Position numbers and translations under genes: made by a program. Below the pieces are notes generated by a model. The model was not told the DNA's origin, did no database searches, and saw only the letters and a list, made by a program, of their open reading frames with translations. From Macrostomum lignano (taxonomy: Eukaryota), in assembly GCA_002269645.1 (NCBI GenBank), contig NIVC01003981.1:1-64000 (forward strand): a stretch of 64,000 nucleotides of DNA, given 5' to 3'. Below, piece after piece: positions 26,554 to 60,778 of this stretch (position 1 is the stretch's first letter; the number at the start of each line of letters is the position of its first letter).

Positions 26554-27434
26554 GATTGGTAAAGTATATATGTAATATTTAGGAAACAAACTGATTTAAT
26601 TGTGACTTTGACGGGACTTCCATTTATATAGCAGTTTGGATCGTTAGGGTGGGGTGACTTTGGAACTGGTGGGTTAAAGGACTTAACACTGGCTTAGCAC
26701 TTTAGTGTTAAGCATGACAGGGAGTAAAATGGCTTACAATATGGCATGATGTGCGTGAATCGTGCATGATATGCTTCATTCAAGAGCATTACCGGATATC
26801 AAGATTCGCTGCGGGGATCAGCTTCAGTTGACTGCGCACAGCGGGGTGGAGGGGTGGGAAGGCGCACGCTGCAGTCCACCAATTTTCACAACTCCACAGG
26901 GGACTATTAGCAGTCCTCTCCATGTGTTTTGATAATATGAATGCCCACCATGTACGTGGACACATGTACTGTATGCATGCAGATTGCATAAAACACAGAT
27001 GCTCAAGATTCATTGACACCCAGATGCATATGGGTATGAGTGTTCATAGGTGACACACTTGCATCTAGAATATTCGCATCGGAACATTTAACCCATCGAA
27101 TACATGTATAATGGGCATGCAATTAACATATATACTGTACACTGTAACGAAATTGCAAAGTTTGATCGTTTAAAATAAAATTAGGTACTTATTAAAACAA
27201 ACTCATTGATATAACAACTATTGTAAGCTACACAGCTGTATGAACTGCATATCATTCATATAATGACAATTTTGGTCACTTCGTCAACAAGCAAATGGGG
27301 AGGACATAGGCATTGGTCACTTTGTCAACCACCAGTAAAGTCGCCTTAACACTTTGGTCACTTCGTCAACCAAGTTGACGAAACGCCAATTGACGAAATG
27401 ACCATCACCCATATCTACTTGCCCTGATCTAGAG

Positions 27435-28315
27435 GGGTCGCCATTATAAGCTCGAAAAATCACATTGTCAATAACAAGGCTCTATCACAAGCTTGAAAAG
27501 TCACAAGCTTAAAAAATAACATTGTCAAAAAGTTTAGCAAACATCATCATAAGCTCAAAAAGGCACAAGCTCTAACCCTAACCCCAAGGCACTAACCCTA
27601 ACTCTAAGGCACCAGTACCCTGCCTAACCCTGAACTATAACCCTAATCCCAACCCTAACCTAAACCTAAACCCTAACTTAAAGGCACTAGTTCTAAATTC
27701 AACCCTAACCCTAAACCCTAACCTTAAGGCATAAGCTCTAACCCTAACCCTATTCAAGCTTGTGATAGTGGTTACTAAACTTTTTGACGATGTGACTTTT
27801 CGAGTTTGTGAATTTTTGAGCTTATGATGGTGGTTGCTAGACTTTTTGATGATATGATTTTTTGAGCTTATAACTTATTGAGCTTGTGATGATGGTTGCT
27901 AAAACTTTTTGATGATGTGATTTTTTGAGCTTATGACTTTTTGAGCTTGTGATGGTGGCTGCTAAATCAATTTTTCAACAATGTGATTTTTTGAGCTTAT
28001 GACTTTTTGAGCTTGTGATGGTGGCTGCTAAATCAATTTTTCAACAATGTGATTTTTTGAGCTTATGACTTTTCAAGCTTGTGATAGTGGTTGCTAAACT
28101 TTTTGACAATATGATTTTTTTAGCTTAAGGTTGAGCTTGTGGGTTGCTAAATCAGTTTTTGACGATGTTATTTTTCGAGCTTATGACTTTTTGAGCTTGT
28201 GATGGTATTGGCTAGATTTTTTGATGATATGATTTTTCAAGCTTATGACTTTTCAAGCTTGTGATAGTGGATGCTTTTTGACAATGTGATTTTTTGAGCT
28301 TATGATGGGCCTCCC
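27435..28315. mobile_element. MITE with about 45-bp TIRs, modular subrepeats and a telomere-like (CCCTAA)n-rich core
   Basis: GGGTCGCCATTATAAGCTCGAAAAATCACATTGTCAA at the left matches the reverse complement of 28279-28315. Flanks ATCTAGAG / ATCTAGAC (8 bp, 1 mismatch). CCCTAA variants occupy about 27570-27750. Confidence 0.8.
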
Positions 28316-28681
28316 ATCTAGACTATGGTCCTGAATAAATATGTGTATCACGGACACAAAGTGCATGCTATATTAATATACCAAAATTCAGGCATATATG
28401 TTAGCTATCATAAATATAGGCCTAGCTAGGGCAAGGTAGAAATTACAAATAAGATGTTAGAAATAGGCCTATCTAGCATACCTGGTATAATTAGACCTAG
28501 GCCTAGGCTGCCTAGGCCTAGCCTATGGCTATAATTTTCTAAATGTGGAATAGGCCTAGATATTGCCATTGCCAAACATCAAATAACTAGAAATTATTTA
28601 ACATAATTTCTTTTTACCCTATTTATCTTAAGCTCAACGCTCAAGCAAGCTAGGCTTGGCTTAAAAAATAGCAATGCTTAC

Positions 28682-28708
28682 AGGCTCGGCAGGCTCCTCC
28701 ATCTCCAT
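28682..28708 (-). CDS. EIF2S2: eIF2-beta copy A, coding exon 1 (MEMEEPAEP)
   Basis: ATG in gacatcATGG context, 27 nt, phase-0 donor cct|GTAAGC. It joins in frame to MFDPS. Homologous to the 27-nt exon at 49881-49907. Confidence 0.8.
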
Positions 28709-30344
28709 GATGTCTTGATGTCCATGATGTCTTGTTGAATTATGATGGCAGTGCTGTGTCTAAAATCTCGCAGTTTGGTTCAAATATGGCTATGGTAGGC
28801 TTCAAAGTCTATATAAGCCTATTATTACAATCTTACTCGATGTATGTCACCATGTGATCGGGTTGGTTGGTTGGCGATAAGAGTCACCGTGGACAAATTC
28901 GACGACAATCTAGTCAAAATTAACGAAAAAAAGGGAAAAAAAATATTATTATTATTAATTTTTCCAGTACAATGGTATTAGTCAATGTACATTACAGTTT
29001 ACTTTTTTATTAAGTTTGTTTTCTCTATTGTTTGTCCTCAAAAATTTTAAAATGAGCTTTCCAAGAAACGTTTCGCTTCTCTTCGTTCAAAAATACCTGT
29101 GCGTTACGCGTATATCTGTATATCATTATTTTTCTAATCGCAAACACTTAATGCCTATCTAAAACTTTGTTTTAAGCGCTCTATTTTTGGTTATTTACTT
29201 CTTCTCTATAAAAATATCACTCATCTTTATTACCTTATAATTGCCTGCAATCCTTACATTTGATATTTTTTTAATTGTCTGAATAATACCTATATACTTA
29301 TTTTTGTTACCTACGGGATCAATTGAATTGCTATACATCGAGTTCATACAATACTTGTTTTTTAATTCCTTACTTAAATACTTTTTGCTTCGTTAGTCAT
29401 TAAAGATTGTTTGAAGTTTCGTAGAAAAAAATTGGTAATGGCTAGAGTTCCGGCACCGGAACCCATTTTCTAACAGCTAGGGATCCGGCAGTGCCGTATA
29501 GAAGCATATAAAGCACCCGACGACAACCGGCTAGCCGGGCCAAAAGCTTACAAAATCATCGGGCTAACCGGCAGGAAAGCGCGCTCTCGAGCTCTCGCTT
29601 CTTCCGGCTAGACGGGCCCAAAGCGCGCTCCCATACAATCAAATGGGAGTGTATCAATTGAAAGCTTTTAACGGGTGTTTAATAACAATTTGCAGTAGAA
29701 AAATCGACGTTTGTTAATATTAATTCGCTTGCATGTAATTTGAAAACAAACTTTACAGGAATGAGCTATGGTTCCTATGTTCAACGTTCAACAAAAGCTT
29801 TTAAGGCATATTTGTTGTGCTACTGTGCATTGCTGTGCTGGCCTATGCACTAGACTAAACAAGTGAAGGCTTCGTGTACAAGATAAATGAAAGGAGCTTT
29901 TCTTAAATTTCTTGTGCATTATTATGTGATTGCTTAAGTAATTTTGTTCTATAGTTTAAAGCCTGTCACATGTCAGTTAATTAATAATACGCAGGCATTT
30001 GAAATATATATGTAGGTCTAATATTTTGAGAAGTAACTTATAAGCTGCTTTTATTCAATTATAAAAAAGCTTGAATTTAATTAAATTCTATTTGTTTAGC
30101 TATAGCCCTATGTATTAGGACTATGTATGTAGGAAAGCCTATTGAGCACTAAGCCTAGGCCTAGCTTATTGACTTGGTCTTAATGAATAGATTTAGCTAA
30201 CTTACTAGATAAGAGCCTTAAAATTTTTGTTTTTTCTATCTATCTACTTTATGTATACCAATAGGCCTAGACTAAATAACAAACTATAAAACTAAGCCTA
30301 CAATATTTTATATCAAATACCTGATGTTTGACTTATTTTCCTTT

Positions 30345-32680
30345 CCTTAGATCCCCTCTCCCCTAACCTTGGATTTCCTCCCTCTAACCCTAGCTTCTCT
30401 CCCCCTGACCCCTGGCTTCTCTCCATCCTAATCCTTGGCTTCACTCTTAACCCTTGGCTTCCCTCCCTTGACCTTGGCTTCCCTCCCCCTGACCCTGGCT
30501 TCTCTCCTTACTGACCCCTGGCTTCTCTCCTCCCTGACCCTGGCTTCCCTCTTCTGACCCTGGCTTCTCTTCCCTTGACCCTGGCTTCTCTCCTCCACTG
30601 ACCCTGGCTTCTCTCCTCCCCTGACCCAGGCTTCTCTCCTCTCCTGACCCTGGCTTCCTTCCCCTAACCCTGGCTTCTCTCCCCTTGACCCCTGGCTTCC
30701 CTCCATCCTAATCCTTGGCTTCACTCCTAACCCTTGGCTTCCCTCCCTTGACCTTGGCTTCCCTCCCCCTGACCCTGGCTTCTCTCCTTACTGACCCCTG
30801 GCTTCTCTCCTCCCTGACCCTGGCTTTGCCCCCCTGACCCTGGCTTTTCTTCCCTTGACCCTAGCTTCTCTCCTCCCCTGACCCTGGCTTCTCTCCTCCC
30901 CTGACCTGGCTTCTCTCCTCCCCTGACCCTGGCTTCCTTCCTAACCCTGGCTTCTCTCCCCTTGACCCTGGCTTCTCTCCCCTTGACCCTGGCTTCTGTC
31001 CCCCTGATCCTGGCTTCCCTCCCTTGACCCTGGCTTCTCTCCTCCCCTGACCCTGGCTTTTCTCCTTACTGACCCCTGGCTTCTCTCCCGCTGACCCTGG
31101 CTTCCCTGCCCTGACCCTGGCTTCCTTCCCCTGACCATGGCTTCTCTCCCCCTGACCCTGGCTTCCCTCCCCTGACCCTGGCTTCCCTCCCCTGACCCTG
31201 GCTTCCCTCCCCTGACCGTGGCTTCTCTCCCCCTAACCCTGGCTTCCTTCCCCTGACCCTGGCTTCTCTCCCCCTGACCCTGGCTTCTCTCTCCCTTACC
31301 CTGGCTTCCCTCCCCTGACCCTGGCTTCTCTCCCGCTGGCCTTGGCTTCCCTCACTTGATCCTGGCTTCCCTCCCCTGACCCTGGCTTCTCTCCCGCTGG
31401 CCTTGGCTTCCCTCACTTGACCCTGGCTTCTCTCCCCTGACCCTCGCTTCCTTCCCCTGACCCTGGCTTCTCTCCCCTGGACCCTGGCTTCTCTCCACTT
31501 GGCCCTGGCTTCTCTCCTCTTGACCCTGGCTTCCCTCCCCTGACCCTGGCTTCTCTCCCCTGGCCCTGGCTTTTCTCCTTACTGACCCCTGGCTTCCCTC
31601 CCTCCTGACCCTGGCTTCCCTCCCCTGACCCTGGCTTCTCTCCCCTGACCCTGGCTTCTCTCTGCCTGGCCCTGGCTTTTCGCCTTACTGACCCCTGGCT
31701 TCTCTCCCCTGACCCTCGCTTCCTTCCCCTGACCCTGGCTTCCTTCCCCTGACCCTGGCTTCCTTCCATCCTAATCCTTGGCTTCACTCTTAACCCTTGG
31801 CTTCCCTCCCTTGACCTTGGCTTCCCTGACCCTGGCTTCTCTCCTTACTGACCCTGGCTTCTCTCCTTACTGACCCTGGCTTCTCTCCTCCTGACCCTGG
31901 CTTCTCTCCTCCCTGACCCTGGCTTCTCTCTCTCCCTGACCCTGGCTTCTCTCCCCCTGACCCTGGCTTCTCTCCCTGACCCTGGCTTCTCTCCTCCCCT
32001 GACCCTGGCTTCTCTCCTCCCCTGACCCTGGCTTCTCTCCTCCCCTGACCCTGGCTTCTCTTCCCCTACCCTGGCTTCCTCCCTTGACCCTGGCTTCTCT
32101 CCCTGACCTGGCTTCCCTCTTGACCCTGGCTTCTCTCCCCTGCCTTGGCTTCCCTCACTTGACCCTGGCTTCTCTCCCCTGACCCTCGCTTCCTTCCCCT
32201 GACCCTGGCTTCCTTCCCCTGACCCTGGCTTCTCTCCCCTGGACCCTGGCTTCTCTCCACTTGGCCCTGGCTTCTCTCCTCCTGACCCTGGCTTCCCTCC
32301 CCTGACCCTGGCTTCTCTCCCCTGGCCCTGGCTTTTCTCCTTACTGACCCCTGGCTTCCCTCCCTCCTGACCCTGGCTTCTCTCCCCCTGACCTTGGCTT
32401 CCCTCCCTTGACCCTGGCTTCTCTCCACTTGGCCCTGGCTTCTGTCCCCCTGACCCTGGCTTCCCTCCCCTGATCCTGGCTTCCCTCCCTGACCCTGGCT
32501 TCCCTCCCTTGACCCTAGCTTCTCTCCTCCCCTTGACTCTGGCTTCTCTCCCCTGACCCTGGCTTCCCTCCCCTGACCCTGGCTTCCCTCCCTCCTGACC
32601 CCTGGATTCCCTCCCTCCTGACCCCTGTTTCCTTCCCTCTTGACCCATGGCTCCCTATCTCCTGACCCCTCTTGACCCGT
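30345..32680. repeat. 20-22-bp C-rich minisatellite (CCCCTGACCCTGGCTTCTCT)n, left arm of the giant element
   Basis: Direct reading; reverse complement of 38610-42250. Confidence 0.95.
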
Positions 32681-33227
32681 AACTTCTGCCCTGCTCTGCC
32701 CTCTTCCTCTGACGTCTGCTGTCTGCTTTACCTTGCTCCTTTGCCCCCTGCTTTTCTGTCCTCTGGTTTTCTGCCCCCTGCTCTGCCCCCGCTGCTTTGC
32801 TCCCTGCTGTCTGCTTTACCCTGCTTCTCCGCCCTCTGCTAAAGTAGTCTCGTGTTAGTACCAAGCAGCACAGCTTATTGAAAGCACATTCTTCCTTCAG
32901 AAAAAGCTACCGGTGAAGCCCAGCTGCTGTACCATTGGCACCTTTGCTTTTGCCTCTGGTGCGATTGGCCTAGCAACAAACAAGCAGCTGTTTGTTCACA
33001 AGCAGCTGTTCACCCGCAAAAGCTATCCAAGCGCGAGCTTTCTAACTATTTGTACACACTGAGCTGAAATTAGTTTGTATGTGCCGCCACTATGAGTTCT
33101 GATACGCTGACATCTGGTGCAACCGTTACGGCTGGGTCTGCCGCTGGTTCCACTTAAGCAGCTGCCTCAAACATCGCTGCTGCAGCCGAAACTGAAGCTG
33201 GCTCCGCCAAAGCTATTTTTTAATTCT

Positions 33228-33470
33228 TTAATACATGTCGACAATCCCTTTAACATTGAGATCACCGAATTCTGTTAATACATGTTCAGATCTTGTAAAG
33301 CTCAACAAAAGCACCCATTTGTCATCGCCCTTTTCCAATATTGCTACTCGCATTACTCCCTGTGCAAATGGAGCCACACTCGACGTTTTTGGTGTCGTTT
33401 TTTTAGGTTGTTTATGGGTGGATTTTCCATTTGTAAAAGCATTTTTCGAATCAATGCAGTTTGTAACATC
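33228..33470 (-). pseudogene. Possible alpha-kinase (eEF2K/MHCK-type) N-lobe fragment, truncated; end of a degenerate coding-like tract (about 35050 to 33230)
   Basis: Minus frame ...SSVAPFAQGVMRVAILEKGDDKWVLLLSF resembles the alpha-kinase PF(A/G)xG(A)(M/F)RxA...V.K motif. Single-motif evidence only. Confidence 0.3.
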
Positions 33471-35289
33471 GGAGCTTCATATATTTTTGCTGTGATTTCT
33501 GGGAGACATTTTTTCGAGACGATACTGCTCTGTGACAGGGTATGGTGTTCAACGTGTGCCATTTTAATTCAATCCTTGATCACAAAGCTCGGAGCAAGTG
33601 CCACTAGACTTCAGTGTCAGGCTTTCAGTTTAAGCAAATAATCCAAAATAATTTCGACTGTACCATTGTGGACCAACAATGACCAACCCCTTATACTGTC
33701 AAAATCCTGTTGTTTTTACAGGTTCTTATATTTCTACAAGGAACTGACAGGTGTTTTTTGTTGTTACCGCCAGTTAATTTTTTAAACATTACTGCTCTTC
33801 ATGAAGACGCGTGCAAAAAATACAGATATAAACTTTCATGTTACATACAGTTATGACCAGGAGCTTTCCGATTTTAGTTGGTCATATAATTTTGTCGAAA
33901 ACTTGGTTTTGTGTTTCTGGAGTATTTCTTAAATAGCATGCGCTCCGCAAAATTTTGTTGATTTAGCTTTACACTCCAGAAGTAAAATTTTCTCAGTGAA
34001 CTCACATTTTATTTCGCTCTTAGTGGTGCAGCTTAAGCATGTTTCGAATGCTCCCAGCAAGCTGCCGAGAGTTCCTACACTGGCAAGAAAGGACGCTGCC
34101 TTGGTGTAGGGCGCTGAAGTGAACAAAAGTGCGCTCGATCGTCAGCGGTGCACATTTGCTGCATGGGCATTCAGTTTTGTGCTGAGCGGTGACGTACGCT
34201 TTTTTGAGGGGTCTGCAGTCCAGGCGGCGTCATGAAGGAGGGAGTGGGTGCTCCTGCTTCTGAGAAGCCCTCAGAGTACTCTGGAGTGAGATTTCTGCTT
34301 CTCACATTCGATGTAGTTGAATATTTCCCGCATGCTAGAATATGCACTGTGCCCTTTGACAACCATTGTTATATAAGGTCTTGGTTGCAAGCTTGGTGCT
34401 CCTGAATATAGACCATGAAATGTCTGTTAATGGTGTCTTGGTAAAAGTGCTCAAGAGAGAAATCTTCATGCGATTCTGATGAGCGCTCACCCTGGTGGGC
34501 CATGGGTATTCCGGCTATAGTGGTTGCATGGAGCAAACCTGAGGCAGGGGTCTAGCAAGGAAGACTCACTTATTGTGTATTAAAAATTTACGCATATTCA
34601 TACATGTAGGGTCGAATTGGGCTTCAGCAACGCAGGGGAAGCGGCAAAATAAGGGCGGGGGCTCGCAGCAGTCTACTGATTCAGTCGGACTGCTAGTCTG
34701 GGGAGCTGTCAAAACAGCCGATGCGCGGTGCACCAGCTGCCGATGCTGCTTCAGTCGCCTACCAACCTGTTCGCGCTGCCAGGAGCGAACTACAAATTAA
34801 GTTTTTCTGCTCGATCCAAGTCATGTGACGAAACCCGGGGGCTGCCTGAGAATATCTGTGTAAACCTCTGGGCTCTAGCGCTGAAAATTACCAGCCGCCG
34901 TGCATGCCTCACATGGACTTTTCCACCTCTGAATGCTGTTTTGTAGCTGACGTTGCGGTCAAGTTTCAATTATCTCGACAGCGCGGGCCCGGGTTGTTTG
35001 TTTGCCGAAGGGCGTGGCCGCCTCTGCAGTCACCTGTGCAGGAGTACACCCGAAAAACTCGACACTACTAGAAATGGCACGTAAATGTACATGTAACACT
35101 CTAATGGACTCTATGCGAGGAGGCATACAAGGGACGGTTTACTTGTAATCAGTGCTGGAAATGAGGAATGTAAAGACTTTTGCATAAGGGGGATCTTTAG
35201 TTGGTGGGCGACTCTATAGGAAATGAAGGGGTTCCCGGCGGGGACCGGTGGTTCGGCTTCGCGGGAAAACAAACAATAATAAAACAAAT

Positions 35290-35570
35290 TTGTATCACCG
35301 CGCCGGCCTGGTGCGTCCAAGCGACCTGTTGCGCCGTCAGCGACTCCAGCTGGCAGGCCACATCATCCGCGCCGAATCGTACTGGCCAAAGCCGGTGCAG
35401 GAGGTGCTGCTGCTGACGCTGCAGGCACCGGCCCTACCGGCGGGGACAGGCGCGCACTCGGCGTTTCGACTCGACTAGCTGCCTGCTGGCTGATGCTGGC
35501 GCCCCGGAGCCGGCGGCGTGGCGTTCATTCACGACCTGTGACGCTGACTGCGTATTCTGTTGTTGTTGTT
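35290..35570 (+). mobile_element. 5'-truncated LINE 3' end with (TTG)n tail, inserted in the giant element's spacer
   Basis: YHRAGLVRPSDLLRRQRLQLAGHIIRAESY..PVQEVLLLTLQAP (RLQLAGHIIR is a typical RTE-like ORF2 C-terminal motif), followed by TGTTGTTGTTGTT. Confidence 0.8.
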
Positions 35571-36870
35571 CTGGTACGTGGCGGCTATGCCTTTTGGCGT
35601 GTACCTATAAAAAACCCGGATCAGCCGCTAGTTTTGTTCAGGGGAGCTTGACCACTAATCAAGCATACACTATCAACTAAATTGATAGAGAGTGTTCAAC
35701 TAAATTACAGCAGGATGCATACTATAGAGAGCGAGTTCTAGGGAGTCTTCACTGGAATCAATGTGTAATCGCTTGTACTTCTTCGTACGTACGTATGGTC
35801 AAGTCACTTGGCTATTATTCTGTTACATGTAATTTCTAGCTCATGTAACTGTATATATGATGTATGGGATGTACGTATATGATACATGTGTAGATCACAG
35901 TTTGTGAGTTCCACAAGTCATAAATAATGTTACCAATATGGCATGATAAACATGGCCATGTACATGTATGCGCCTTATTGTAGGTAGAAACTGTGTTCAG
36001 GTATATTCTATTGTATGTCAATACATTTTGCACTTACATGTATAGTCGTAGAGTTCACGTCCTGGAAAGCAATTACTCGTAGCACATGTGCATGAAGCTG
36101 TGTGATTCTTATTTTAAAGAAGATTCTTGACCAAATTTCTTAACAGTCTAGAGGTGCACGCACTAAATTCAGGGAACGGCAGGAGTCGCATGCGGACGGC
36201 CGTTCTGTCTTCCGTACATGTACTTCTACATGTACGTATTAATATAAGAAATTCCATTGAAGCCATTCAGAATCGCTTCCGTATTTATTGGTGCTCTCCC
36301 AAGTGCTAATGACCCCTCCTCGCTACGCCCCAACATTGGCACCTACACAGAACACACTAACACCTAACCTCATCTTTTAATGAGTTGCATAGCGCTATGC
36401 GTGATGAAGTACTGTACGAGTAACGCAAGTTACTATCGATAATAATATCAAAATTCTATCCCTTTTCTAACAGCCCGAAATACATGAACTCGATCCTATA
36501 TAGTTACAGTGTATAGTGCATGTATATCGATTTATACCACTTTCTAGAATGTATCCTATTGTACACCACACCACTTCACTCAACACCCACCACACCACCT
36601 TACTCAATGCAGGTACATTATATCGCAGAAGTCACATAAACGCTGGAAGAAATATTTATTAAACTGTTAGAAATCGACAGTAACTCGTACATGTACAAGG
36701 GTACATACGTAATTGTATGTGGCGCTTTCATCAATAAGGCTTTTTAGCATGTCCAAGTTTTTTAAACAAACGAACTAAAACAAGTTTATTAGAGCATACT
36801 TAAGGTCTTAAAAATAGGTTACACAGCTATATTCCCCTAGTACAGGAAGTTCCCAAAGCACTTCTCTGGC

Positions 36871-37450
36871 TAGAGTTGGCGCCAGAGGAACTCGCTAAGA
36901 TGGGACTCAAAAAAGGTCGTCACTAGTGCCATGCTGGCTGCAAAACTTCGCCTTCACGAGTGCCCAGGTGCCTTCGATGTTGTTTGTGGGCACAGTTGGA
37001 TCGTTCGGATCAACGAAATGCAGACGGTGATTGACAAACACCTGGGGAAGCGCACTATATACCTGCCAGCCGTCAGTTAAAATGCGTGTCCCAGGCAACA
37101 CACTGCTGAATAATCTGACTCAGCAGACCGGTTGGGTACTTGTACCATCATGCATTTGCGTGTACCTTGCTTGACCATCCCAAGCACCCAGTGGCCCTCG
37201 CGGTAAGCTCCCTGATAATATTTGCGATGAAAAAATTGAACTCATCCACTTCAACTTCTCTTCCTTTTATTGGCTTTTTTATTGCAAACAAAAAAGAACA
37301 ATTATTTCTCAGTTTTCGTACAACATATCCTTTATTTTTCTCTCGCTCATCGCACATTCCATTGTCAGCTACTAGTATTTTCTCTTTGTCGTTTGTCAAA
37401 AAATGGCACAATTCAGGTACACTAAATGGCACACTATAATAAAAAACGAG
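36871..37450 (-). pseudogene. Decayed Merlin (IS1016/ISXO2-like DDE) transposase
   Basis: Across frameshifts: GREVEVDE..F; KYYQGAYREGHWVLGMV..GTRKCMMVQVPNRSAE; PGTRILTDGWQVYSAL; VNHRLHFVDP..PTVPTNNIEGTWALVK; DLFESHLSEFLWRQ. These match ISXO2/Merlin motifs (EIDE, SDxWxAY, VNH..FV, TNxIExxW, EFxWR). Confidence 0.9.
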
Positions 37451-37639
37451 AAAATAACACGGACAATTCGATTTAACAATTCCACAAGACTTAGCAACAG
37501 CCGCAAAAACGAACGTACCACGACGTGAACACCTACAAGTCAACTTATGATTTTTTGACCAAAATATAAAATATGCAGAAGGTACAAGTGGTCAGTTCAG
37601 CCACACTGTCAGAGCGCGACGACAGTCCTTTGGTCAAAC

Positions 37640-38035
37640 CTCTCAGCTCTCAACTTCCGCCACCTTCCCGCTCTCAGCTCCCGCCACCTTCCCGCTCTCA
37701 GCTCCCGCCACCTTCCTGCTCTCAGCTCCCGCCACCTTCCCGCTCTCAGCTCCCGCCACCTTCCCGCTCTCAGCTCCCGCCACCTTCCCGCTCTGAGCTC
37801 CCGCCACCTTCCCGCTCTCAGCTCCCGCCACCTTCCCGCTCTCAGCTCCCGCCACCTTCCCGCTCTCAGCTCCCGCCACCTTCCCGCTCTCAGCTCCCGC
37901 CACCTTCCCGCTCTCAGCTCCCGCCACCTTCCCGCTCTCAGCTCCCGCCACCTTCCCGCTCTCAGCTCCCGCCACCTTACCGCTCTCAGCTCCCGCCACC
38001 TTCCCGCTCTCAGCTCCCGCCACCTTACCGCTCTC
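37640..38035. repeat. 24-bp near-perfect minisatellite (CTCAGCTCCCGCCACCTTCCCGCT)n, about 16 units
   Basis: Direct reading; lies just upstream of the Merlin ORF. Confidence 0.95.
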
Positions 38036-38609
38036 CTCGCCTCTGCCAAAATTAGATATGGCTTGTCAATGCATGGCTTTTGTGTTATGGCTATTGGTGA
38101 CTTGTGAAACCTCACTAACGGTGATCGGAAGTACTAATGCATGTATATGTGCATGCATAGAGTACATGAGCAAGAAACTAACAAGTTATGGATAAAAGTA
38201 GAGCAAGGGTAAAAGGTACGGATAAACAAAGTTAAAAAAATTGACTATAAATAAAGCTAACATGAACTGTCAATGATACGAATTTCCATTTGCTGACAGC
38301 TCAAGACAAAATGCTTTCAACGACCGTTCCATTCTGAGCTAACTTTGATACGATCACCGCATTGCTGAAGGTTATAGTACGCTTTGCACCGACTGTAGCG
38401 TTCGAGGCGGCTGTTCGAGCAGAACCAGCGGCAGTCCCGGCCGCAGCAGCGTTGTTCGAGACGGTGACCAAAGCAAAGGTGCCAATGGTACAGCAGCTGG
38501 GCTTCACCGGTAGCTTTTTCTGAAGGAAGAATGTGCTTTCAATAAGCTGTGCTGCTTGGTACTAATACGAGACTACTTTAGCAGAGGGCGGAGAAGCAGG
38601 GTAGAGCAG

Positions 38610-41600
38610 ATAGCAGAGGGCAGGGTCAGGGGAAGGAAGCGAGGGTCAGGGGAGAGAAGCCAGGGTCAGGGGGGAGAGAAGCCAGGGTCAGGGGAAGGAA
38701 GCCAGGGTCAGGGGGAGAGAAGCCAGGGGTCAGGGGAGGGAAGCCAGGGTCAGGGGAGGGAAGCCAGGGTCAGGGGAGGGAAGCCAGGGTCAGGGGAGGG
38801 AAGCCAGGGTCAGGGGGAGAGAAGCCAGGGTCAGGGGGAGAGAAGCCAGGGGTCAGGGGAGGGAAGCCAGGGTCAGGGGAGGGAAGCCAGGGTCAGGGGG
38901 AGAGAAGCCAAGGTCAGGGGGAGAGAAGCCAGGGTCAGGGGAGGGAAGCCAGGGTCATTGAGAGAGAAGCCAGGGTCATTGAGAGAGAAGCCAGGGTCAT
39001 TGAGAGAGAAGCCAGGGGTCAGTAAGGCGAAAAGCCAGGGCCAGGCAGAGAGAAGCCAGGGTCAGGGGAGAGAAGCCAGGGTCAGGGGAGGGAAGCCAGG
39101 GTCAGGGAGAAGAGAAGCCAGGGGTCAGTAAGGAGAAAAGCCAGGGCCAGGGGAGAGAAGCCAGGGTCAGGGGGGAGAGAAGCCAGGGTCAGGGGAAGGA
39201 AGCCAGGGTCAGGGGGAGAGAAGCCAGGGGTCAGGGGAGGGAAGCCAGGGTCAGGGGAGGGAAGCCAGGGTCAGGGGAGGGAAGCCAGGGTCAGGGGGAG
39301 AGAAGCCAAGGTCAGGGGGAGAGAAGCCAGGGTCAGGGGAGGGAAGCCAGGGTCATTGAGAGAGAAGCCAGGGTCATTGAGAGAGAAGCCAGGGGTCAGT
39401 AAGGCGAAAAGCCAGGGCCAGGCAGAGAGAAGCCAGGGCCAGGGGAGAGAAGCCAGGGTCAGGGGAGGGAAGCCAGGGTCAGGGAGAAGAGAAGCCAGGG
39501 GTCAGTAAGGAGAAAGCCAGGGCCAGGGGAGAGAAGCCAGGGTCAGGGGGGAGAGAAGCCAGGGTCAGGGGAAGGAAGCCAGGGTCAGGGGAAGGAAGCG
39601 ACGGTCAGGGGAGAGAAGCCAGGGTCAAGTGAGGGAAGCCAAGGCCAGCGGGAGAGAAGCCAGGGTCAAGGGAGGGAAGCCAAGGTCAGGGGGAGAGAAG
39701 CCAGGGTCAGGGGAGGGAAGCCAGGGTCATTGAGAGAGAAGCCAGGGTCATTGAGAGAGAAGCCAGGGGTCAGTAAGGCGAAAAGCCAGGGCCAGGCAGA
39801 GAGAAGCCAGGGTCAGGGGAGAGAAGCCAGGGTCAGGGGAGGGAAGCCAGGGTCAGGGAGAAGAGAAGCCAGGGGTCAGTAAGGAGAAAGCCAGGGCCAG
39901 GGGAGAGAAGCCAGGGTCAGGGGAGGGAAGCCAGGGTCAGGAGGGAGGGAAGCCAGGGGTCAGTAAGGAGAAAAGCCAGGGCCAGGGGAGAGAAGCCAGG
40001 GTCCAGGGGAGAGAAGCCAGGGTCAGGGGAAGGAAGCCAGGGTCAGGGGAAGGAAGCGAGGGTCAGGGGAGAGAAGCCAGGGTCAAGTGAGGGAAGCCAA
40101 GGCCAGCGGGAGAGAAGCCAGGGTCAAGGGAGGGAAGCCAAGGTCAGGGGGAGAGAAGCCAGGGTCAGGGGAGGGAAGCCAGGGTCATTGAGAGAGAAGC
40201 CAGGGTCATTGAGAGAGAAGCCAGGGGTCAGTAAGGCGAAAAGCCAGGGCCAGGCAGAGAGAAGCCAGGGTCAGGGGAGAGAAGCCAGGGTCAGGGGAGG
40301 GAAGCCAGGGTCAGGGAGGAGAGAAGCCAGGGGTCAGTAAGGAGAAAGCCAGGGCCAGGGGAGAGAAGCCAGGGTCAGGGGAGGGAAGCCAGGGTCAGGA
40401 GGGAGGGAAGCCAGGGGTCAGTAAGGAGAAAAGCCAGGGCCAGGGGAGAGAAGCCAGGGTCAGGGGGGAGAGAAGCCAGGGTCAGGGGAGAGAAGCCAGG
40501 GTCAGGGGAAGGAAGCCAGGGTCAGGGGAAGGAAGCGAGGGTCAGGGGAGAGAAGCCAGGGTCAAGTGAGGGAAGCCAAGGCCAGCGGGAGAGAAGCCAG
40601 GGTCAAGGGAGGGAAGCCAGGGTCAAGGGGAGAGAAGCCAGGGTTAGGGGAAGGAAGCCAGGGTCAGGAGAGGAGAGAAGCCTGGGTCAGGGGAGGAGAG
40701 AAGCCAGGGTCAGGGGAGGAGAGAAGCCAGGGTCAAGGGAAGAGAAGCCAGGGTCAGGGGAGGGAAGCCAGGGTCAGGGAGGAGAGAAGCCAGGGTCAGG
40801 AGAGAAGAGAAGCCTGGGTCAGGGGAGGAGAGAAGCCAGGGGTCAGTAAGGAGAGAAGCCAGGGTCAGGGGGAGGGAAGCCAAGGTCAAGGGAGGGAAGC
40901 CAAGGGTTAAGAGTGAAGCCAAGGATTAGGATGGAAGGAAGCCAGGGTCAGGGGAAGGAAGCCAGGGTCAGGGGAAGGAAGCGAGGGTCAGGGGAGAGAA
41001 GCCAGGGGTCAGTAAGGCGAAAAGCCAGGGCCAGGCAGAGAGAAGCCAGGGTCAGGGGAGAGAAGCCAGGGTCAGGGGAGGGAAGCCAAGGTCAGGGGGA
41101 GAGAAGCCAGGGTCAGGGGAGGGAAGCCAGGGTCATTGAGAGAGAAGCCAGGGGTCAGTAAGGCGAAAAGCCAGGGCCAGGCAGAGAGAAGCCAGGGTCA
41201 GGGGAGAGAAGCCAGGGTCAGGGGAGGGAAGCCAGGGTCAGGAGGGAGGGAAGCCAGGGGTCAGTAAGGAGAAAAGCCAGGGCCAGGGGAGAGAAGCCAG
41301 GGTCAGGGGAGGGAAGCCAGGGTCAGGAGGAGAGAAGCCAGGGCCAAGTGGAGAGAAGCCAGGGTCCAGGGGAGAGAAGCCAGGGTCAGGGGAAGGAAGC
41401 GAGGGTCAGGGGAGAGAAGCCAGGGTCAAGTGAGGGAAGCCAAGGCCAGCGGGAGAGAAGCCAGGGTCAGGGGAGGGAAGCCAGGATCAAGTGAGGGAAG
41501 CCAAGGCCAGCGGGAAAGAAGCCAGGGTCAGGGGAGGGAAGCCAGGGTCAGGGAGAGAGAAGCCAGGGTCAGGGGGAGAGAAGCCAGGGTTAGGGGGAGA

Positions 41601-42250
41601 GAAGCCACGGTCAGGGGAGGGAAGCCAGGGTCAGGGGAGGGAAGCCAGGGTCAGGGGAGGGAAGCCAGGGTCAGGGGGAGAGAAGCCATGGTCAGGGGAA
41701 GGAAGCCAGGGTCAGGGCAGGGAAGCCAGGGTCAGCGGGAGAGAAGCCAGGGGTCAGTAAGGAGAAAAGCCAGGGTCAGGGGAGGAGAGAAGCCAGGGTC
41801 AAGGGAGGGAAGCCAGGATCAGGCGGACAGAAGCCAGGGTCAAGGGGAGAGAAGCCAGGGTCAAGGGGAGAGAAGCCAGGGTTAGGGAAGGAAGCCAGGG
41901 TCAGGGGAGGAGAGAAGCCAGGTCAGGGGAGGAGAGAAGCCAGGGTCAGGGGAGGAGAGAAGCCAGGTCAGGGGAGGAGAGAAGCCAGGGTCAGGGGAGG
42001 AGAGAAGCTAGGGTCAAGGGAAGAAAAGCCAGGGTCAGGGGGGCAAAGCCAGGGTCAGGGAGGAGAGAAGCCAGGGGTCAGTAAGGAGAGAAGCCAGGGT
42101 CAGGGGGAGGGAAGCCAAGGTCAAGCCGTCAAGGGAGGGAAGCCAAGGGTTAGGAGTGAAGCCAAGGATTAGGATGGAGGGAAGCCAGGGGTCAGGGGGA
42201 GAGAAGCTAGGGTTAGAGGGAGGAAATCCAAGGTTAGGGGAGAGGGGATC
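38610..42250. repeat. 20-22-bp G-rich minisatellite (AGAGAAGCCAGGGTCAGGGG)n, right arm of the giant element
   Basis: Direct reading; about 1.3 kb longer than its left-arm mirror. Confidence 0.95.
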
Positions 42251-44219
42251 TAAGGAAAGGAAAATAAGTCAAACATCAGGTATTTGATATAAAATATTGT
42301 AGGCTTAGTTTTATAGTTTGTTATTTAGTCTAGGCCTATTGTTGGTATACATAAAGTAGATAGATAGAAAAAACAAAAATTTTAAGGCTCTTATCTAGTA
42401 AGTTAGCTAAATCTATTCATTAAGACCAAGTCAATAAGCTAGGCCTAGGCTTAGTGCTCAATAGGCTTTCCTACATACATAGTCCTAATACATAGGGCTA
42501 TAGCTAAACAAATAGAATTTAATTAAATTCAAGCTTTTTTATAATTGAATAAAAGCAGCTTATAAGTTACTTCTCAAAATATTAGACCTACATATATATT
42601 TCAAATGCCTGCGTATTATTAATTAACTGACACGTGACAGGCTTTAAACTATAGAACAAAATTACTTAAGCAATCACATAATAATGCACAAGAAATTTAA
42701 GAAAAGCTCCTTTCATTTATCTTGTACACGAAGCCTTCACTTGTTTAGTCTAGTGCATAGGCCAGCACAGCAATGCACAGTAGCACAACAAATATGCCTT
42801 AAAAGCTTTTGTTGAACGTTGAACATAGGAACCATAGCTCATTCCTGTAAAGTTTGTTTTCAAATTACATGCAAGCGAATTAATATTAACAAACGTCGAT
42901 TTTTCTACTGCAAATTGTTATTAAACACCCGTTAAAAGCTTTCAATTGATACACTCCCATTTGATTGTATGGGAGCGCGCTTTGGGCCCGTCTAGCCGGA
43001 AGAAGCGAGAGCTCGAGAGCGCGCTTTCCTGCCGGTTAGCCCGATGATTTTGTAAGCTTTTGGCCCGGCTAGCCGGTTCTCGTCGGGTGTATAAGGACTG
43101 CTAAGAACATATCTAAGAAGTCTGAATATTAAAAGCATCTCGTCCCGGACTCCCGAATCTTATCATATCGTCTTAAATTTTAATCTAGAACAAAATCTCA
43201 ATATCAGCCACCTGTAGAAAGAAAAATATAATGTTCCATCTATATTATAATGGCTCTGCTGTATCCATAGCCATTAGAAAATGGGTTCCGGTGCTGGAAC
43301 TCTAGCCATTGCCAAAAAAATTAGGCATTCTTTTAAATAATATATTATTACAAAACTTGAAATTTCGTACAAGTACTTATGCATAAATATCTCCTTCTAT
43401 AAGTTCTACTCTTGAATTATTATTAAATATAAGAAAATTGACATAATACTGGCCAAAGAGGCTTCTTGCCTGAGCCAACTTATTACTTACTACTACTTAC
43501 TTACTTAGGCCTACTACTTGTTTCTTCATTCTTGAGTTGAAGAGGCACAATATGATGTTGTATTTGGATCAAACATTGTTTTGTCAAAGGTCATGAGCTT
43601 TAGTTTAAAATCACTTCACTTCCTTCACTTCAAAAAAACATATGCAATGTGATATTTTTTTTAGCTCCTTACTCTAAGTAGGCCGAGTGTTCCCCCTTTT
43701 AGAAATCTAATATGATATTGATATTATAATGATATAATGTGAAATATAATGTAAAAAGCTAGGAAGTGAAATTCAATTGAATAGATTTGTAAGCCTCTAT
43801 TACTATAGTAGACAGTGAATATATATTTATAGTTATACTTTAATGATTTAAATCAAGAAGTTTAAAAATGCTAATTGTTCCTTAAGTTTTAAACTTCAGA
43901 GGAGAAGCTTATATTGCTAGATAGATCTTGCAATGCTAAGTTTAAGGATACAAGTTGTTTGCTTCAAATATAAAAAAGCATAGCATTAAAAACAGTTTTA
44001 ATATGCTTAATAGAGTATAATTTTAATTTAATAAAGTCCTAATTAACTGCAATTAGATAGGGCCTAGAGATAATATTGATTGAATCAAATTAGATTAGGC
44101 CTAAATTAAATTATATATGTTTCTTGGAGAGGATGTAAGTAAGAAATAATAGAAAATAAAAAAAGAAAGATCAAAGGATATAATATAAAATTGATCATGG
44201 TTATATGCTATATCAGTAC

Positions 44220-45055
44220 ATGGTTAGATATTCTTTATTTATATTTTGGCTTAAATAAAGCTTAAAATAATTTACAAAAGTGTAGATATAAGAACACAGA
44301 AGAACACAGAGAGAAAGAGAAAAAAATAAATAGTAGAGAAAAAAGAATAGAAATAAGTATAGGCATGGGGTAGTTGCAAGAAAAGAGAAGACAGATAAGA
44401 GAGGAAAGAAAAAAGAATAGAAAAAAGTATAGGCATGAGGTAGTTGCAAGAAAAGAGAAGACAGATAAGAGAGGAGAGAAAAAAGAATAGAAAAAACTAT
44501 AGGCATGAGGTAGTTGCAAGAAAAGAGAAGACAGATAAGAGAGGAGAGAAAAAAGATAAGAGAGACATAAGGAAAGAGAAAAGATGAAAAATGAGAGCAG
44601 AGAGGAAAAGAAAAAGAAAAGAGAAAAGAAAGAGGGATAGATAGAGAAAAGACAAAAAATGAGAGAATAGAGATGAGAAAGGAGAGAAAAGAGAGTAGAG
44701 AAAGAAGTGAGAGGAGAAAGGAGAAAGGAAAAAAATGACAAGAGAAATAAAAGTAGAGATGAGAGCAGAGAGGTAAGAGAAAAGAGAGAACAAGTAGAGG
44801 AGAGACAATAGATAAGAGGAGAAAGAAAGTAGAGATAGAAGCAAGAGGAAAAGGGAGACAGATAACAAGAGAAATGGGAGAACAATGAGAGAGATAAGAG
44901 AGTAGAGAGGAGAGAGGAAAGTAGAAATGAGAGCACAGAGAGGAGAGATGAGAGAGCACAGAGAGGAGAGATGAGAGAGAAAAGAGAGGAGAGATAAGAG
45001 CAAAGAGGAAGATGAGAGAATAAAGAGAAAAGAGGAGATAGGAAAAAGTCAGTCT
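44220..45055. repeat. Purine (A/G)-rich low-complexity tract including a 70-bp unit x3 (44345-44555)
   Basis: GAATAGAAA starts at 44345, 44415 and 44485. It explains the Leu/Ser/Phe-rich minus-strand pseudo-ORFs. Confidence 0.85.
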
Positions 45056-45585
45056 GGACAATGGCAATCATTTTTTGCAAACAGGGAAAACAAGATATGT
45101 TATTTAGGAGGTTTTAAAGAAGATTTAGAAGATTGGATTAGGGTCATAGGATTCAGCTAATAGATTTTAGGGAATGTAATTTTGGCAATGGGAATTCTAT
45201 TCCCTTTCTCCTCCAATGGAGTTGGCATTTTTAAAAAAAACTAATTTTCTATTGGATTATCTAAGATCCATTTTCTTGACAATGCCATTTTTGTAAATAA
45301 ATATTTGTATGCAATAGGGTCTAGGGAACTTTGTAGTTGTACCATGTGCATTGGTATACAAAAATGTATACTTCTATATGCAATAGTTAAACTCTGGTAT
45401 GCAGTCTGCAGGCCAAAATATTTGTATGCATAGTCTATATTTTGGAGGCTATTGTGTAGGATTATATTTATATTAGTATATTGATAAATCAATGATGTGT
45501 ATTTGTCTAGTCTCCCAATTTTTTCCTACTATAATCCTAATATAGCTTTAAATATCATTTAGCCCTTTTTGCATCCATTTTTCAG

Positions 45586-45753
45586 GACTGCGTTGCTGTT
45601 CGACTTAAGCCTGGGGAGCTGCTGCGCGAGTCCCTGATGCAACTGGTGAAAGAGCAGGGCCTGAGCTCTGCTTTTGTTATCAGCTGTGTTGGTAGCCTCA
45701 CCCAAGCTAGACTGCGCTATGCCACCTCATCTGATGGTTCTGGCACCAACCCA
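45586..45753 (+). CDS. PPC/DUF296-domain protein, internal or first coding exon
   Basis: Acceptor tttttcAG|GAC, 168 nt, donor cca|GTAAGT. DCVAVRLKPGELLRESL..LVKEQGLSSAFVISCVGSLTQARLRYA matches the PPC pattern RLxPG...CVGSL..A.LR.A. Absent from the ORF track. Confidence 0.88.
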
Positions 45754-45942
45754 GTAAGTATTCTGATTTTTCTAAAAAAACTCAAGCACTTGTGATATTA
45801 TATTAGTCTCAGCAATACATAGAAATGAATTGTTGTCTAGATTTTATCTTTGTGTCATAGAATGTGATATAGAAGATCAAATTTAATTTTGACACGCTGA
45901 ATTTAAACCCCAGATGCCATATTGACATTGGCATCATTTTCC

Positions 45943-46352
45943 GGGTCGCCATCATAAACCCGAAAAATCACAACTCCGAAAGCACTTCCCATCATAAACC
46001 CAAAAAATCACAAACCCGAAAATTCACAACTCCGAAATTAATAGCAACGCCCATCATAAACCCGAAATATCATAAACCCGAAAAATCACAACTCCGAAAA
46101 CCAAAAATGGCAAAATAGCATTGCCCATCGTAAACCCGAAATATCATAACTCCGAAAGTGTTAGCAACGCCCATCATAAACCCGAAATATCATAACTTCG
46201 AAAACCAAAATAGTGTTGGACATTGCTAGCACTTTCGGAGTTAGGATATTTCGGGTTTGTGATTTTTCGGGTTTATGATGTGCGTTGCTATTTTGTTTTT
46301 CGGAGTTGTGATTTTTCGGGTTAATGATATTTCGGGATGTGATGCCCCCCCC
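45943..46352. mobile_element. MITE related to 27435-28315, in the DUF296 intron
   Basis: Left end GGGTCGCCATCATAAACCCGAAAAATCACAAC; inverted subrepeats TTTCGGAGTTGTGATTTTTCGGG at the right. TSD is degenerate. Confidence 0.75.
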
Positions 46353-60752: not shown

Positions 60753-60778
60753 AATGGAGAACTGAGAGTATTCCTCAC

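What the first reader, a model, noticed from the sequence alone, without database searches (positions are those of the whole stretch)
29434..43313. Giant 13.9-kb foldback transposon with 3.5/4.8-kb inverted arms, 9-bp TSD and a Merlin transposase remnant
Seen: matching termini GG(T/C)AATGGCTAGAGTTCC(G/A)GCACCGGAACCCATTTTCTAA; exact 9-bp flanking direct repeat AAAAAAATT; arms of about 0.85 kb unique AT-rich DNA plus kb-scale minisatellite plus about 125 bp unique DNA; a 5.5-kb spacer with a decayed Merlin transposase, a LINE fragment and gene-like cargo. Known: Merlin/IS1016 elements have 5'-GG termini and 8-9-bp TSDs but TIRs of tens to a few hundred bp. Drosophila FB and Mutator-like foldbacks have about 9-bp TSDs and long, internally repetitive arms. 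Inference: either a Merlin-derived element with TIRs roughly ten times longer than I know of, or a Mutator/FB-like giant that captured a Merlin. It lies 726 bp upstream of the eIF2-beta A start codon and between the two eIF2-beta genes.
Basis: partly seen in the sequence, partly recalled or inferred. Interest (0 to 1): 0.85.

Follow-up and report, generated by a model that had tools for sequence, protein, structure and literature searches.

The report
Foldback transposon nested in a MITE
The "13.9-kb transposon" is two nested mobile elements in the flatworm Macrostomum lignano: an old 297-bp miniature element that owns the reported ends and 9-bp duplication, and a young 13.6-kb non-coding foldback transposon with its own ends and a 7-bp duplication inserted inside it.

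Summary
The window is contig NIVC01003981.1 of the Macrostomum lignano Mlig_3_7 assembly.

The reported ends are not the ends of the foldback. Two paralogous copies of the locus (NIVC01000799.1 and NIVC01000302.1) are collinear with the window on both sides. At this site they carry only an intact ~297-bp MITE with those same ends and the same 9-bp duplication.

In the window that MITE is split at 29513|29514 and 43089|43090 by a 13,576-bp insertion. The insertion has these features:
- Ends that are an exact inverted repeat, CACCCGACGA(C/G)AACCGGCTAGCCGGGCC.
- Three ~21-nt subterminal repeats.
- A 7-bp duplication (TATAAAG/TATAAGG) of a sequence that is single-copy in the paralogues.
- Outer arm domains that are 99.8% identical, against 86–95% for the window versus paralogue flanks.

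It is therefore a young, non-autonomous foldback-type DNA transposon. It is neither Merlin-ended nor a 9-bp FB/Mutator type, and the Merlin remnant is a passenger. A 7-bp duplication with 3.4/4.6-kb repeat-filled arms most resembles two-TIR Galileo copies (P superfamily), but no transposase or second copy could be found. This is an ordinary kind of element and a new family.

The parts
29425..29433 (.). Left copy of the 9-bp target-site duplication (AAAAAAATT) of the old MITE
   Evidence: The paralogues L006/L007 have the same duplication at 8/9.
29434..29513 (+). Left 80 bp of the 297-bp MITE. Its TIR starts GGTAATGGCTAGAGTTCCGGCACCGGAACCC.
   Evidence: Collinear with L006 8954-9037 and L007 5868-5946. 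31/32 identical to a terminus in metagenome contig L004.
29507..29513 (.). Left copy of the foldback's 7-bp target-site duplication (TATAAAG)
   Evidence: This sequence is single-copy in L006 and L007 (GAAGCATATAAAGACTGC).
29514..43089 (.). The foldback-type transposon proper, 13,576 bp, absent from both paralogous loci
   Evidence: The whole segment has no blastn hit in L006/L007/L008.
29514..29541 (+). Left terminal inverted repeat CACCCGACGACAACCGGCTAGCCGGGCC. Its partner lies at 43062-43089 on the minus strand with one mismatch.
   Evidence: only two matches in the window, 0 expected by chance. Also.
29527..29624 (+). Three subterminal direct repeats of about 21 nt (CCGGCTAGCCGGGCCAAAAGC) at 29527, 29560 and 29604, mirrored in the right arm. 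Candidate transposase-binding sites (inferred).
29514..30355 (+). Outer unique domain of the left arm (842 bp, AT-rich apart from the first ~120 bp)
   Evidence: Compared with 42248-43089: 837 matches, 2 mismatches, 6 gap columns, 99.76%. Also.
30356..32668 (+). Left-arm minisatellite, about 2.3 kb, unit CTCTCCCCCTGACCCTGGCTT with a 41-bp higher-order period
32669..32950 (+). Inner domain of the left arm. The last 153 bp pair with 38470-38622.
   Evidence: 96.7% over 153 bp
32951..38469 (.). Middle domain, 5,519 bp, with no intact gene
35227..35677 (+). Possible LINE 3'-end fragment, based on an RRLRWxGH-like motif in two frames. Not verified.
   Evidence: Reading of the translations. No Pfam hit.
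36830..37591 (-). Dead Merlin/IS1595-type transposase remnant. It is spread over three reading frames, has in-frame stops, and has no recognisable TIRs of its own.
   Evidence: and for the absence of TIRs
37646..38035 (+). 24-bp tandem array (16 copies, 97% matches) just upstream of the 5' end of the Merlin remnant
38470..38620 (-). Inner domain of the right arm
38621..42247 (-). Right-arm minisatellite, about 3.6 kb, the same unit on the opposite strand
42248..43089 (-). Outer unique domain of the right arm, ending in the terminal repeat …GTCGGGTG
43090..43096 (.). Right copy of the foldback's 7-bp duplication (TATAAGG, one substitution)
43090..43313 (-). Right 224 bp of the MITE. Read inward on the minus strand from 43313, its TIR starts GGCAATGGCTAGAGTTCCAGCACCGGAACCC.
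   Evidence: Collinear with L006 8738-8960 and L007 5652-5874
43314..43322 (.). Right copy of the MITE's 9-bp duplication (AAAAAAATT)

Best explanation
Two nested class II elements are present.

(1) An old 297-bp MITE occupies 29434-29513 plus 43097-43313. It has GG termini, imperfect TIRs of about 62 bp and a 9-bp duplication, AAAAAAATT. It inserted upstream of the eIF2-beta gene before the three M. lignano copies of this locus diverged.

(2) Later, in the window's copy only, a 13,576-bp non-autonomous foldback-type transposon (29514-43089) inserted into the MITE body. This duplicated 7 bp (TATAAAG).

Anatomy of the foldback:
- A 28-bp terminal inverted repeat, CACCCGACGA(C/G)AACCGGCTAGCCGGGCC.
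- Three subterminal 21-nt repeats, which I infer to be transposase-binding sites.
- Arms built as outer unique domain (842 bp), minisatellite (2.3 or 3.6 kb) and inner domain.
- A 5.5-kb middle domain of junk: a dead Merlin gene, a 24-bp array and a possible LINE tail.

Inferred mechanism: cut-and-paste mobilisation in trans by a transposase encoded elsewhere that makes 7-bp staggered target cuts. The best guess is a P-superfamily (Galileo/1360-like) enzyme, at about 30% confidence. The arms are kept nearly identical by youth and/or intra-element gene conversion, while the minisatellites change length independently by slippage or unequal exchange.

Shown: the nesting, the ends, both duplications, the empty site, and the lack of coding capacity. 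Inferred: trans-mobilisation and the transposase family.
For: - Identity of the window: L005 is 100% identical to window 12899-38702.
- Collinear paralogues L006 and L007 run from the window's right flank (44429-43090) straight into 29513-29070.
- The three-way alignment shows an intact MITE in L006. The reconstructed 297-bp MITE aligns at 90% over 295 bp to L006 and L007.
- Junctions: gaagcaTATAAAG|CACCCGACGAC… and …GTCGGGTG|TATAAGGactgc in the window, against GAAGCATATAAAGACTGC in both paralogues.
- The inserted segment starts and ends exactly at its own inverted repeat and has subterminal repeats.
- No part of the 13.6 kb is found in 65 kb of paralogous sequence.
- The outer arms are 99.76% identical, against 86-95% for the window versus paralogue flanks.
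- The only transposase trace is a degenerate IS1595/Merlin domain.
- The MITE terminus recurs at 31/32 in an unrelated metagenome contig, with a different flank and a different interior.
- Literature: 7-bp TSDs for Galileo and 1360 (PMC3698922). Galileo two-TIR copies with 4.2/4.7-kb repeat-rich TIRs and no transposase (PMC4168063). The outer domain / tandem repeat / inner domain / non-coding middle architecture of the foldback element Tetris (PMC4079207). Three subgenomes (S, L1, L2) in M. lignano DV1 (PMC10733133).
Against: - Only one copy of the foldback could be examined. No second copy, no copy with a transposase and no read-level confirmation was obtainable with these tools.
- The 7-bp duplication is 6/7, not perfect.
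- The target (TATAAAG) does not match Galileo's palindromic GTANTAC.
- No THAP or P-type domain was detected, so the superfamily assignment rests on TSD length, CA ends and architecture alone.
- The paralogues could in principle have lost the insert. However, a loss that leaves exactly one TSD copy and no footprint is not the usual outcome of excision.
Confidence: 0.82

Rival explanations
1. One reading: one 13.9-kb element (29434-43313) bounded by the GG…AATGGCTAGAG termini and the 9-bp AAAAAAATT duplication. It would be either a Merlin with giant TIRs or a Mutator/FB-type giant.
For: The termini match 38/40 and are flanked by an exact 9-bp direct repeat. GG ends and 8-9-bp TSDs are Merlin features (PMC8101967). 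A Merlin remnant lies inside.
Against: The same termini and TSD bound an intact 297-bp element at the same site in two paralogous loci. The near-identical arms start 80 bp and 224 bp inside these termini, exactly at a separate inverted repeat with its own 7-bp duplication. The Merlin gene is dead and has no link to either pair of ends.
Confidence: 0.03
2. The giant element is ancestral, and the 297-bp element in the paralogues is an in-situ internal-deletion derivative of it. This is the usual way MITEs arise from larger elements.
For: MITEs commonly derive from larger elements by internal deletion, often at short direct repeats. The deleted segment is flanked by a 7-bp direct repeat.
Against: The 'deleted' segment begins and ends precisely at a perfect 28-bp inverted repeat with subterminal repeats. 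That coincidence is expected of an insertion, not of a deletion. Its arms are 99.8% identical while the surrounding MITE and flanks are 5-14% diverged between copies. L006 and L007 both show the same clean site.
Confidence: 0.05
3. Assembly artefact: a chimeric or fold-back PacBio read, or a minisatellite mis-join, created the inverted structure in the Canu assembly.
For: Mlig_3_7 is an error-prone-PacBio Canu assembly of a very repeat-rich polyploid genome, and 36% of its scaffold length is reported to be chimeric (PMC5730564, PMC10733133).
Against: The arms differ in length by 1.2 kb, and a unique 5.5-kb middle domain separates them. Both junctions are clean and carry a target duplication of a sequence that is single-copy in the paralogues. 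Missed-adapter palindromes have no spacer and no TSD.
Confidence: 0.04
4. Not transposition: a pre-formed palindromic DNA fragment was captured at a staggered double-strand break during repair.
For: Only one copy is known, and no transposase is linked to it.
Against: Terminal inverted repeats, subterminal repeats and a fixed-length flanking duplication are the signature of transposase-mediated integration.
Confidence: 0.05

Closest known systems
Galileo (P superfamily, Drosophila), especially transposase-less 'two-TIR' copies
   Same: Both have a 7-bp target duplication and very long, internally repetitive TIRs whose two sides vary independently. A described copy has TIRs of 4,246 and 4,680 bp and no transposase (PMC4168063, PMC3573991), compared with 3,437 and 4,620 bp here. 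In both, other TEs lie inside.
   Different: No THAP or P-type transposase trace was found here. The target TATAAAG differs from the GTANTAC palindrome. The host is a flatworm, not a fly. The tandem unit is 20/41 bp rather than about 210 bp. No sequence similarity was tested, because no Galileo sequence was available in these tools.
Tetris (Drosophila virilis foldback element) and its MITE partner DAIBAM
   Same: The arm plan is the same: outer domain, tandem repeats, inner domain, then a variable non-coding middle domain. All known copies are non-autonomous, and the arms are a potential source of satellite-like arrays (PMC4079207).
   Different: Tetris has 8-10-bp TSDs and is assigned to Mutator. 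Here the TSD is 7 bp. The MITE found here is the insertion target, not a relative that shares the foldback's ends.
Drosophila FB (Foldback) / Phantom-Mutator group, and Rehavkus
   Same: Long inverted arms made of short tandem repeats, and elements that carry minisatellites (PMC6446971; FB from my own knowledge).
   Different: These have 9-bp (8-10) TSDs, and no MULE, Phantom or PHD transposase trace was found here. The 9-bp duplication in the window belongs to the MITE.
Merlin / IS1016 superfamily
   Same: The interior contains a real PF12762 DDE remnant. The host MITE has the Merlin hallmarks of a 5'-GG end and a 9-bp TSD (PMC8101967).
   Different: The foldback's ends are CA…TG with a 7-bp TSD. 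The Merlin gene is degenerate, lacks its own TIRs, and lies in the middle domain as a passenger. A related Merlin (L003, 56% identity) has unrelated 45-bp TIRs, GGCATGCGTGAGCG….

Membership tests
Merlin superfamily (claimed for the whole 13.9-kb unit) | Encodes, or derives from an element encoding, a DDE_Tnp_IS1595 transposase | tested here: inconclusive
   A remnant is present (41.8 bits after frame correction; E=3e-54 to homologues). It is broken over three frames, contains stops, and has no demonstrable link to either pair of ends.
Merlin superfamily (claimed for the whole 13.9-kb unit) | Termini begin 5'-GG and the TSD is 8-9 bp (PMC8101967) | tested here: not met
   The mobile 13,576-bp unit ends in CACCCGACGA… and has a 7-bp TSD. 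The GG ends and 9-bp TSD belong to the 297-bp MITE, which is also present without the insert.
Merlin-type MITE (the 297-bp host element) | Short, non-coding, with TIRs starting GG and an 8-9-bp TSD | tested here: met
   297 bp; TIRs about 62 bp at 87%; GG(T/C)AATGG ends; AAAAAAATT at 9/9 in the window and 8/9 in L006/L007.
Merlin-type MITE (the 297-bp host element) | Shares its termini with an autonomous Merlin of the same genome and is multi-copy | not testable with these tools
   No M. lignano genome search is available. The only other hit is one 31/32 terminus in JGI metagenome contig Ga0210059_1053888. Related Merlins L002 and L003 have different TIRs. A MULE-type MITE (9-bp TSD) is not excluded.
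Foldback-type elements (a structural class, not a clade) | Long terminal inverted arms containing tandem repeats, a short or non-coding middle, and flanking TSDs | tested here: met
   Arms of 3,437 and 4,620 bp with a 20/41-bp minisatellite; a middle domain without an intact ORF; a 7-bp TSD with an empty site in the paralogues.
P superfamily (Galileo/1360-like) | 7-8-bp TSD | tested here: met
   TATAAAG/TATAAGG, 7 bp, single-copy in L006 and L007. TSD lengths from PMC3698922.
P superfamily (Galileo/1360-like) | THAP-domain P-type transposase in autonomous copies | tested here: not met
   The Pfam scan found no THAP or Tnp_P_element hit at E<=1. It covered all three minus frames of the middle domain, the plus frames of about 33.9-35.8 kb, and ten further ORFs, eight in the middle domain and two in the outer arm. 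Autonomous copies elsewhere in the genome could not be searched.
P superfamily (Galileo/1360-like) | Palindromic target motif GTANTAC (Galileo) | tested here: not met
   The target is TATAAAG. This is a single insertion, so it is weak evidence.
Mutator / FB / Phantom / Rehavkus | TSD of about 9 bp (8-10/11) | tested here: not met
   The foldback's TSD is 7 bp. No MULE, SWIM or PHD domain was found.

The most novel reading that the evidence does not exclude
The 13.6-kb element is the first member of a Galileo-like (P-superfamily) foldback family outside Diptera. It would have been active in Macrostomum lignano after its recent polyploidisation. Its minisatellite-filled arms would be one of the sources of the unusually large tandem-repeat fraction (about 15%) that makes this genome hard to assemble.
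Probability: 0.2. Interest if true: 0.55.

Novelty: new member of a known kind. Interest (0 to 1): 0.35.

Why it matters
This corrects a tempting mis-annotation. It is not a Merlin with ten-fold oversized TIRs but a nested pair of elements. The case shows how a host MITE's ends and TSD can be mistaken for those of the element inserted into it.

The foldback is present in one of three subgenome copies, and its arms are about 99.8% identical. A foldback family has therefore probably moved in M. lignano since polyploidisation.

Long hairpin-forming inverted repeats are recombinogenic. Galileo, BuT5 and DAIBAM generate inversions in flies. This one sits about 0.8 kb upstream of the start codon of an essential gene, eIF2-beta.

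If the family is multi-copy, it gives a concrete, testable link between transposon arms and the minisatellite load of this model flatworm's genome.

Tried and rejected
- Exact look-ups of the two intronless eIF2-beta ORFs failed, because the annotated product has a 7-aa upstream exon. A homology search then identified the organism and its paralogues.
- The MITE terminus was searched in metagenome, bacterial/archaeal genome and viral collections. This gave one metagenome hit and nothing else.
- The foldback terminus was searched in the genome and viral collections, with no hits.
- I tried to reach other genomic copies through proteins. The minisatellite ORF (267 aa) gave no hit at E<=1e-5. The Merlin search returned no M. 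lignano protein, with a best identity of 63%.
- I looked for the Merlin remnant's own TIRs and for a link to the MITE TIR. There are none. A 16-bp match at 36460-36474 (E=3.7) is chance, since no GGTAATGGCTAGAG lies upstream of it.
- TIRs of related Merlins were compared. L003 has GGCATGCGTGAGCG… and L002 is different again. Neither resembles either pair of ends here.
- I tested whether the structure is part of a larger palindrome that includes the two inverted eIF2-beta genes. It is not: there is no inverted homology between 23638-29434 and 43313-53136.
- I tested whether each arm is a complete element in itself, as in a composite transposon. The terminal 28-mer occurs only twice, and the inner arm ends do not mirror the outer ends.
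- The termini are not an RNA gene: there are no Rfam or tRNA hits.
- Inverted-repeat continuation into the spacer is weak, with only 42-44-bp matches at about 79-80% complementarity.

Full report
**What is in the sequence**

The inverted structure is real. Arms at 29434-32950 and 38470-43313 pair with each other. Each arm contains a minisatellite with a 20/41-bp unit, CTCTCCCCCTGACCCTGGCTT. It covers 30356-32668 (about 2.3 kb) on the left and 38621-42244 (about 3.6 kb) on the right, on opposite strands (the strand skew flips). The spacer 32951-38469 is 5,519 bp.

The terminal 40 bp match 38/40. The 37-mer occurs only at these two places in the window, with 0 expected by chance. AAAAAAATT lies immediately outside both ends as a direct repeat.

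One detail did not fit a single element. After the about 75 bp of imperfect terminal similarity, the left side has 80 bp and the right side 224 bp before the arms suddenly become essentially identical: 748 nt with one mismatch.

**Interior**

Pfam scans covered all three minus frames of the spacer, the plus frames of about 33.9-35.8 kb, and ten further ORFs, eight in the spacer and two in the outer arm. They found only DDE_Tnp_IS1595 (Merlin) on the minus strand. The remnant, about 37591-36830, is spread over three frames and contains stops. Once frame-corrected, it scores 41.8 bits against a gathering cut-off of 27. It also hits ~315-aa IS1595-domain proteins at E=3e-54 with 53-63% identity.

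The remnant has no TIRs of its own. A 97%-homogeneous 24-bp array (37646-38035) lies just upstream of its 5' end. The 'LINE fragment' is only a motif-level resemblance (LRRQRLQLAGHIIR…/RRGQARTRR) at about 35.2-35.7 kb with no Pfam support. I could not substantiate the 'gene-like cargo' at all.

**Where the window comes from**

The 232-aa intronless ORF at 22899-23597 (-) is 100% identical to Macrostomum lignano BOX15_Mlig014777g2. Its locus, L005, is 100% identical to window 12899-38702. The window is therefore GCA_002269645.1 contig NIVC01003981.1, in contig coordinates.

The annotated gene has a 7-codon first exon (MEEPAEP) starting at 28702.

**The decisive comparison**

Cluster mates of that protein led to two paralogous copies of the locus: L006 (NIVC01000799.1) and L007 (NIVC01000302.1). 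M. lignano DV1 carries three subgenomes, S, L1 and L2 (PMC10733133), so three copies are expected.

Both paralogues are collinear with the window on both sides. In both, the sequence homologous to the window's right flank and right terminus (44429-43090) runs directly into the sequence homologous to 29513-29070. The three-way alignment shows an intact short element in L006 with the same GGCAATGGCTAGAG… and …CTCTAGCC…ATTACC ends, flanked by AATTTTTTT/AATTTTTTC. A 297-bp element rebuilt from window 29434-29513 plus 43097-43313 aligns at 90% over 295 bp to both paralogues.

L006 and L007 are 99.6% identical to each other here, and 86-95% identical to the window.

**The real foldback**

In the window the MITE is interrupted by 29514-43089, which is 13,576 bp. 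The junctions read as follows:
- Window, left: gaagcaTATAAAG|CACCCGACGAC…
- Window, right: …GTCGGGTG|TATAAGGactgctaag
- Both paralogues: GAAGCATATAAAGACTGCTAAG

The insert thus starts and ends exactly at its own inverted repeat, CACCCGACGA(C/G)AACCGGCTAGCCGGGCC (two matches in the window, 0 expected). It is flanked by a 7-bp duplication (6/7) of a sequence that is single-copy at the empty sites.

The first about 110 bp carry three direct copies of a ~21-nt motif, CCGGCTAGCCGGGCCAAAAGC. This is the usual look of subterminal transposase-binding sites, which is an inference. No part of the 13.6 kb occurs in 65 kb of paralogous sequence.

The outer arm domains (842 bp) differ by 2 substitutions and 6 gap columns, 99.76% identity. 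The inner 153 bp are 96.7% identical. The insertion is therefore much younger than the split of the locus copies, or its arms are being homogenised.

**How it most likely works**

This is a non-autonomous foldback-type class II transposon. Its plan is outer domain, tandem repeats, inner domain, then a non-coding middle. That is the plan described for Tetris (PMC4079207), and it resembles FB and Galileo.

TSD length is set by the transposase. Seven bp is characteristic of Galileo and 1360 in the P superfamily (PMC3698922), not of Merlin (8-9 bp, GG ends; PMC8101967) nor of FB/Mutator/Rehavkus (about 9 bp; PMC6446971, PMC4079207). Galileo also supplies a precedent for the arm size: a copy with TIRs of 4,246 and 4,680 bp and no transposase (PMC4168063). 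It further shows independent tandem-repeat expansion in the two TIRs (PMC3573991).

I therefore propose trans-mobilisation by a transposase that makes 7-bp staggered cuts, most plausibly P-like. This is a guess at roughly 30%. No THAP or P-type domain is present, the target is not GTANTAC, and I have only one insertion. The Merlin remnant is a passenger in the middle domain.

**What the MITE is**

GG ends plus a 9-bp TSD fit Merlin, but MULE-type MITEs are not excluded. Its terminal 32 bp recur at 31/32 in JGI metagenome contig Ga0210059_1053888 (L004). There the flank is different (TTTCGAAAT), and the interior is unrelated and has its own 22- and 39-bp subterminal tandem repeats. This supports a real TIR family shared by otherwise unrelated elements.

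**Rivals**

- A single 13.9-kb Merlin or Mutator element is contradicted by the paralogues.
- In-situ deletion in the paralogues would require the deletion endpoints to coincide exactly with a perfect inverted repeat. It would also require the arms to have stayed 99.8% identical while the flanks diverged.
- An assembly artefact is unlikely, given unequal arms, a unique 5.5-kb middle and clean TSD-bearing junctions. Reads were not available to me, and Mlig_3_7 is known to contain chimeric scaffolds (PMC10733133).

**Limits**

I could not search the M. lignano genome by nucleotide. The searches for more copies were:
- The MITE terminus in the metagenome, prokaryote-genome and viral collections, which gave only the one L004 hit.
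- The foldback terminus in the prokaryote-genome and viral collections, with no hit.
- The minisatellite ORF against the protein database, with no hit.

**Verdict**

This is a real and cleanly resolved nested insertion. The headline claim of Merlin- or FB-type termini with a 9-bp TSD on a 13.9-kb element is wrong. What remains is a new family of a known kind of element. It is of moderate interest because it appears recently active in a model flatworm and carries kb-scale minisatellite arms.

Noticed in passing
window 22270-23638 (-) and 53136-54503 (+): The two eIF2-beta coding exons, each with an adjoining minisatellite, form a 1.37-kb inverted duplication at 97% identity. The satellite is about 0.3 kb at 22270-22557 but about 2.8 kb at 54222-56981. 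The divergent gene pair is also present in NIVC01000302.1 (L007/L008), so it predates the subgenome split.
   Followed up: partly
L006 2986-7228 (and the equivalent in L007), site = window ~45065: The paralogues carry a ~4.2-kb insertion that the window lacks. It has ~285-bp direct terminal repeats (92%), TG…CA ends and a 5-bp GATTG duplication, so it looks like an LTR-retrotransposon. The three locus copies therefore differ by several lineage-specific TE insertions.
   Followed up: partly
L004 (JGI metagenome contig Ga0210059_1053888) 487-518, minus strand: A 31/32 match to the MITE terminus in an otherwise unrelated, apparently non-coding eukaryote-like contig. It is followed by 22-bp and 39-bp subterminal tandem repeats, and the contig ends 487 bp inside the element. 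The source organism is unknown.
   Followed up: partly
window 765-1156, 1646-2335, 2864-4998, 8380-13242, 44213-45080, 60311-60778, 63396-63989: The window is packed with unrelated minisatellite arrays, up to 4.9 kb at 8380-13242. This agrees with the reported ~15% tandem-repeat content of the genome. None of these arrays lies in an inverted-repeat pair within the window.
   Followed up: partly
window 15203-15935 (-): A broken piggyBac-type transposase remnant (PF13843 DDE_Tnp_1_7, E=1.7e-18 for 15483-15935, with a second fragment in another frame).
   Followed up: partly
window 2305-2784 (+): The last exon of a rhodopsin-family GPCR (7tm_1, 29.7 bits, just under the 30.5 cut-off, with an NPxxY-type C-terminus). 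A minisatellite follows immediately.
   Followed up: no
window 45586-47221 (+): An annotated gene with a PCC domain (PF03479) is the neighbour on the other side of the insertion. It is conserved next to eIF2-beta in the paralogues. The foldback therefore sits in a divergent intergenic region.
   Followed up: no
window 38621-42247 (+ strand) and 30356-32668 (- strand): The G-rich strand of the arm minisatellite (CAGGGTCAGGGGGAGAGAAGC…) has closely spaced G3-G5 runs and could form G-quadruplexes. This is a reading of the sequence only.
   Followed up: no
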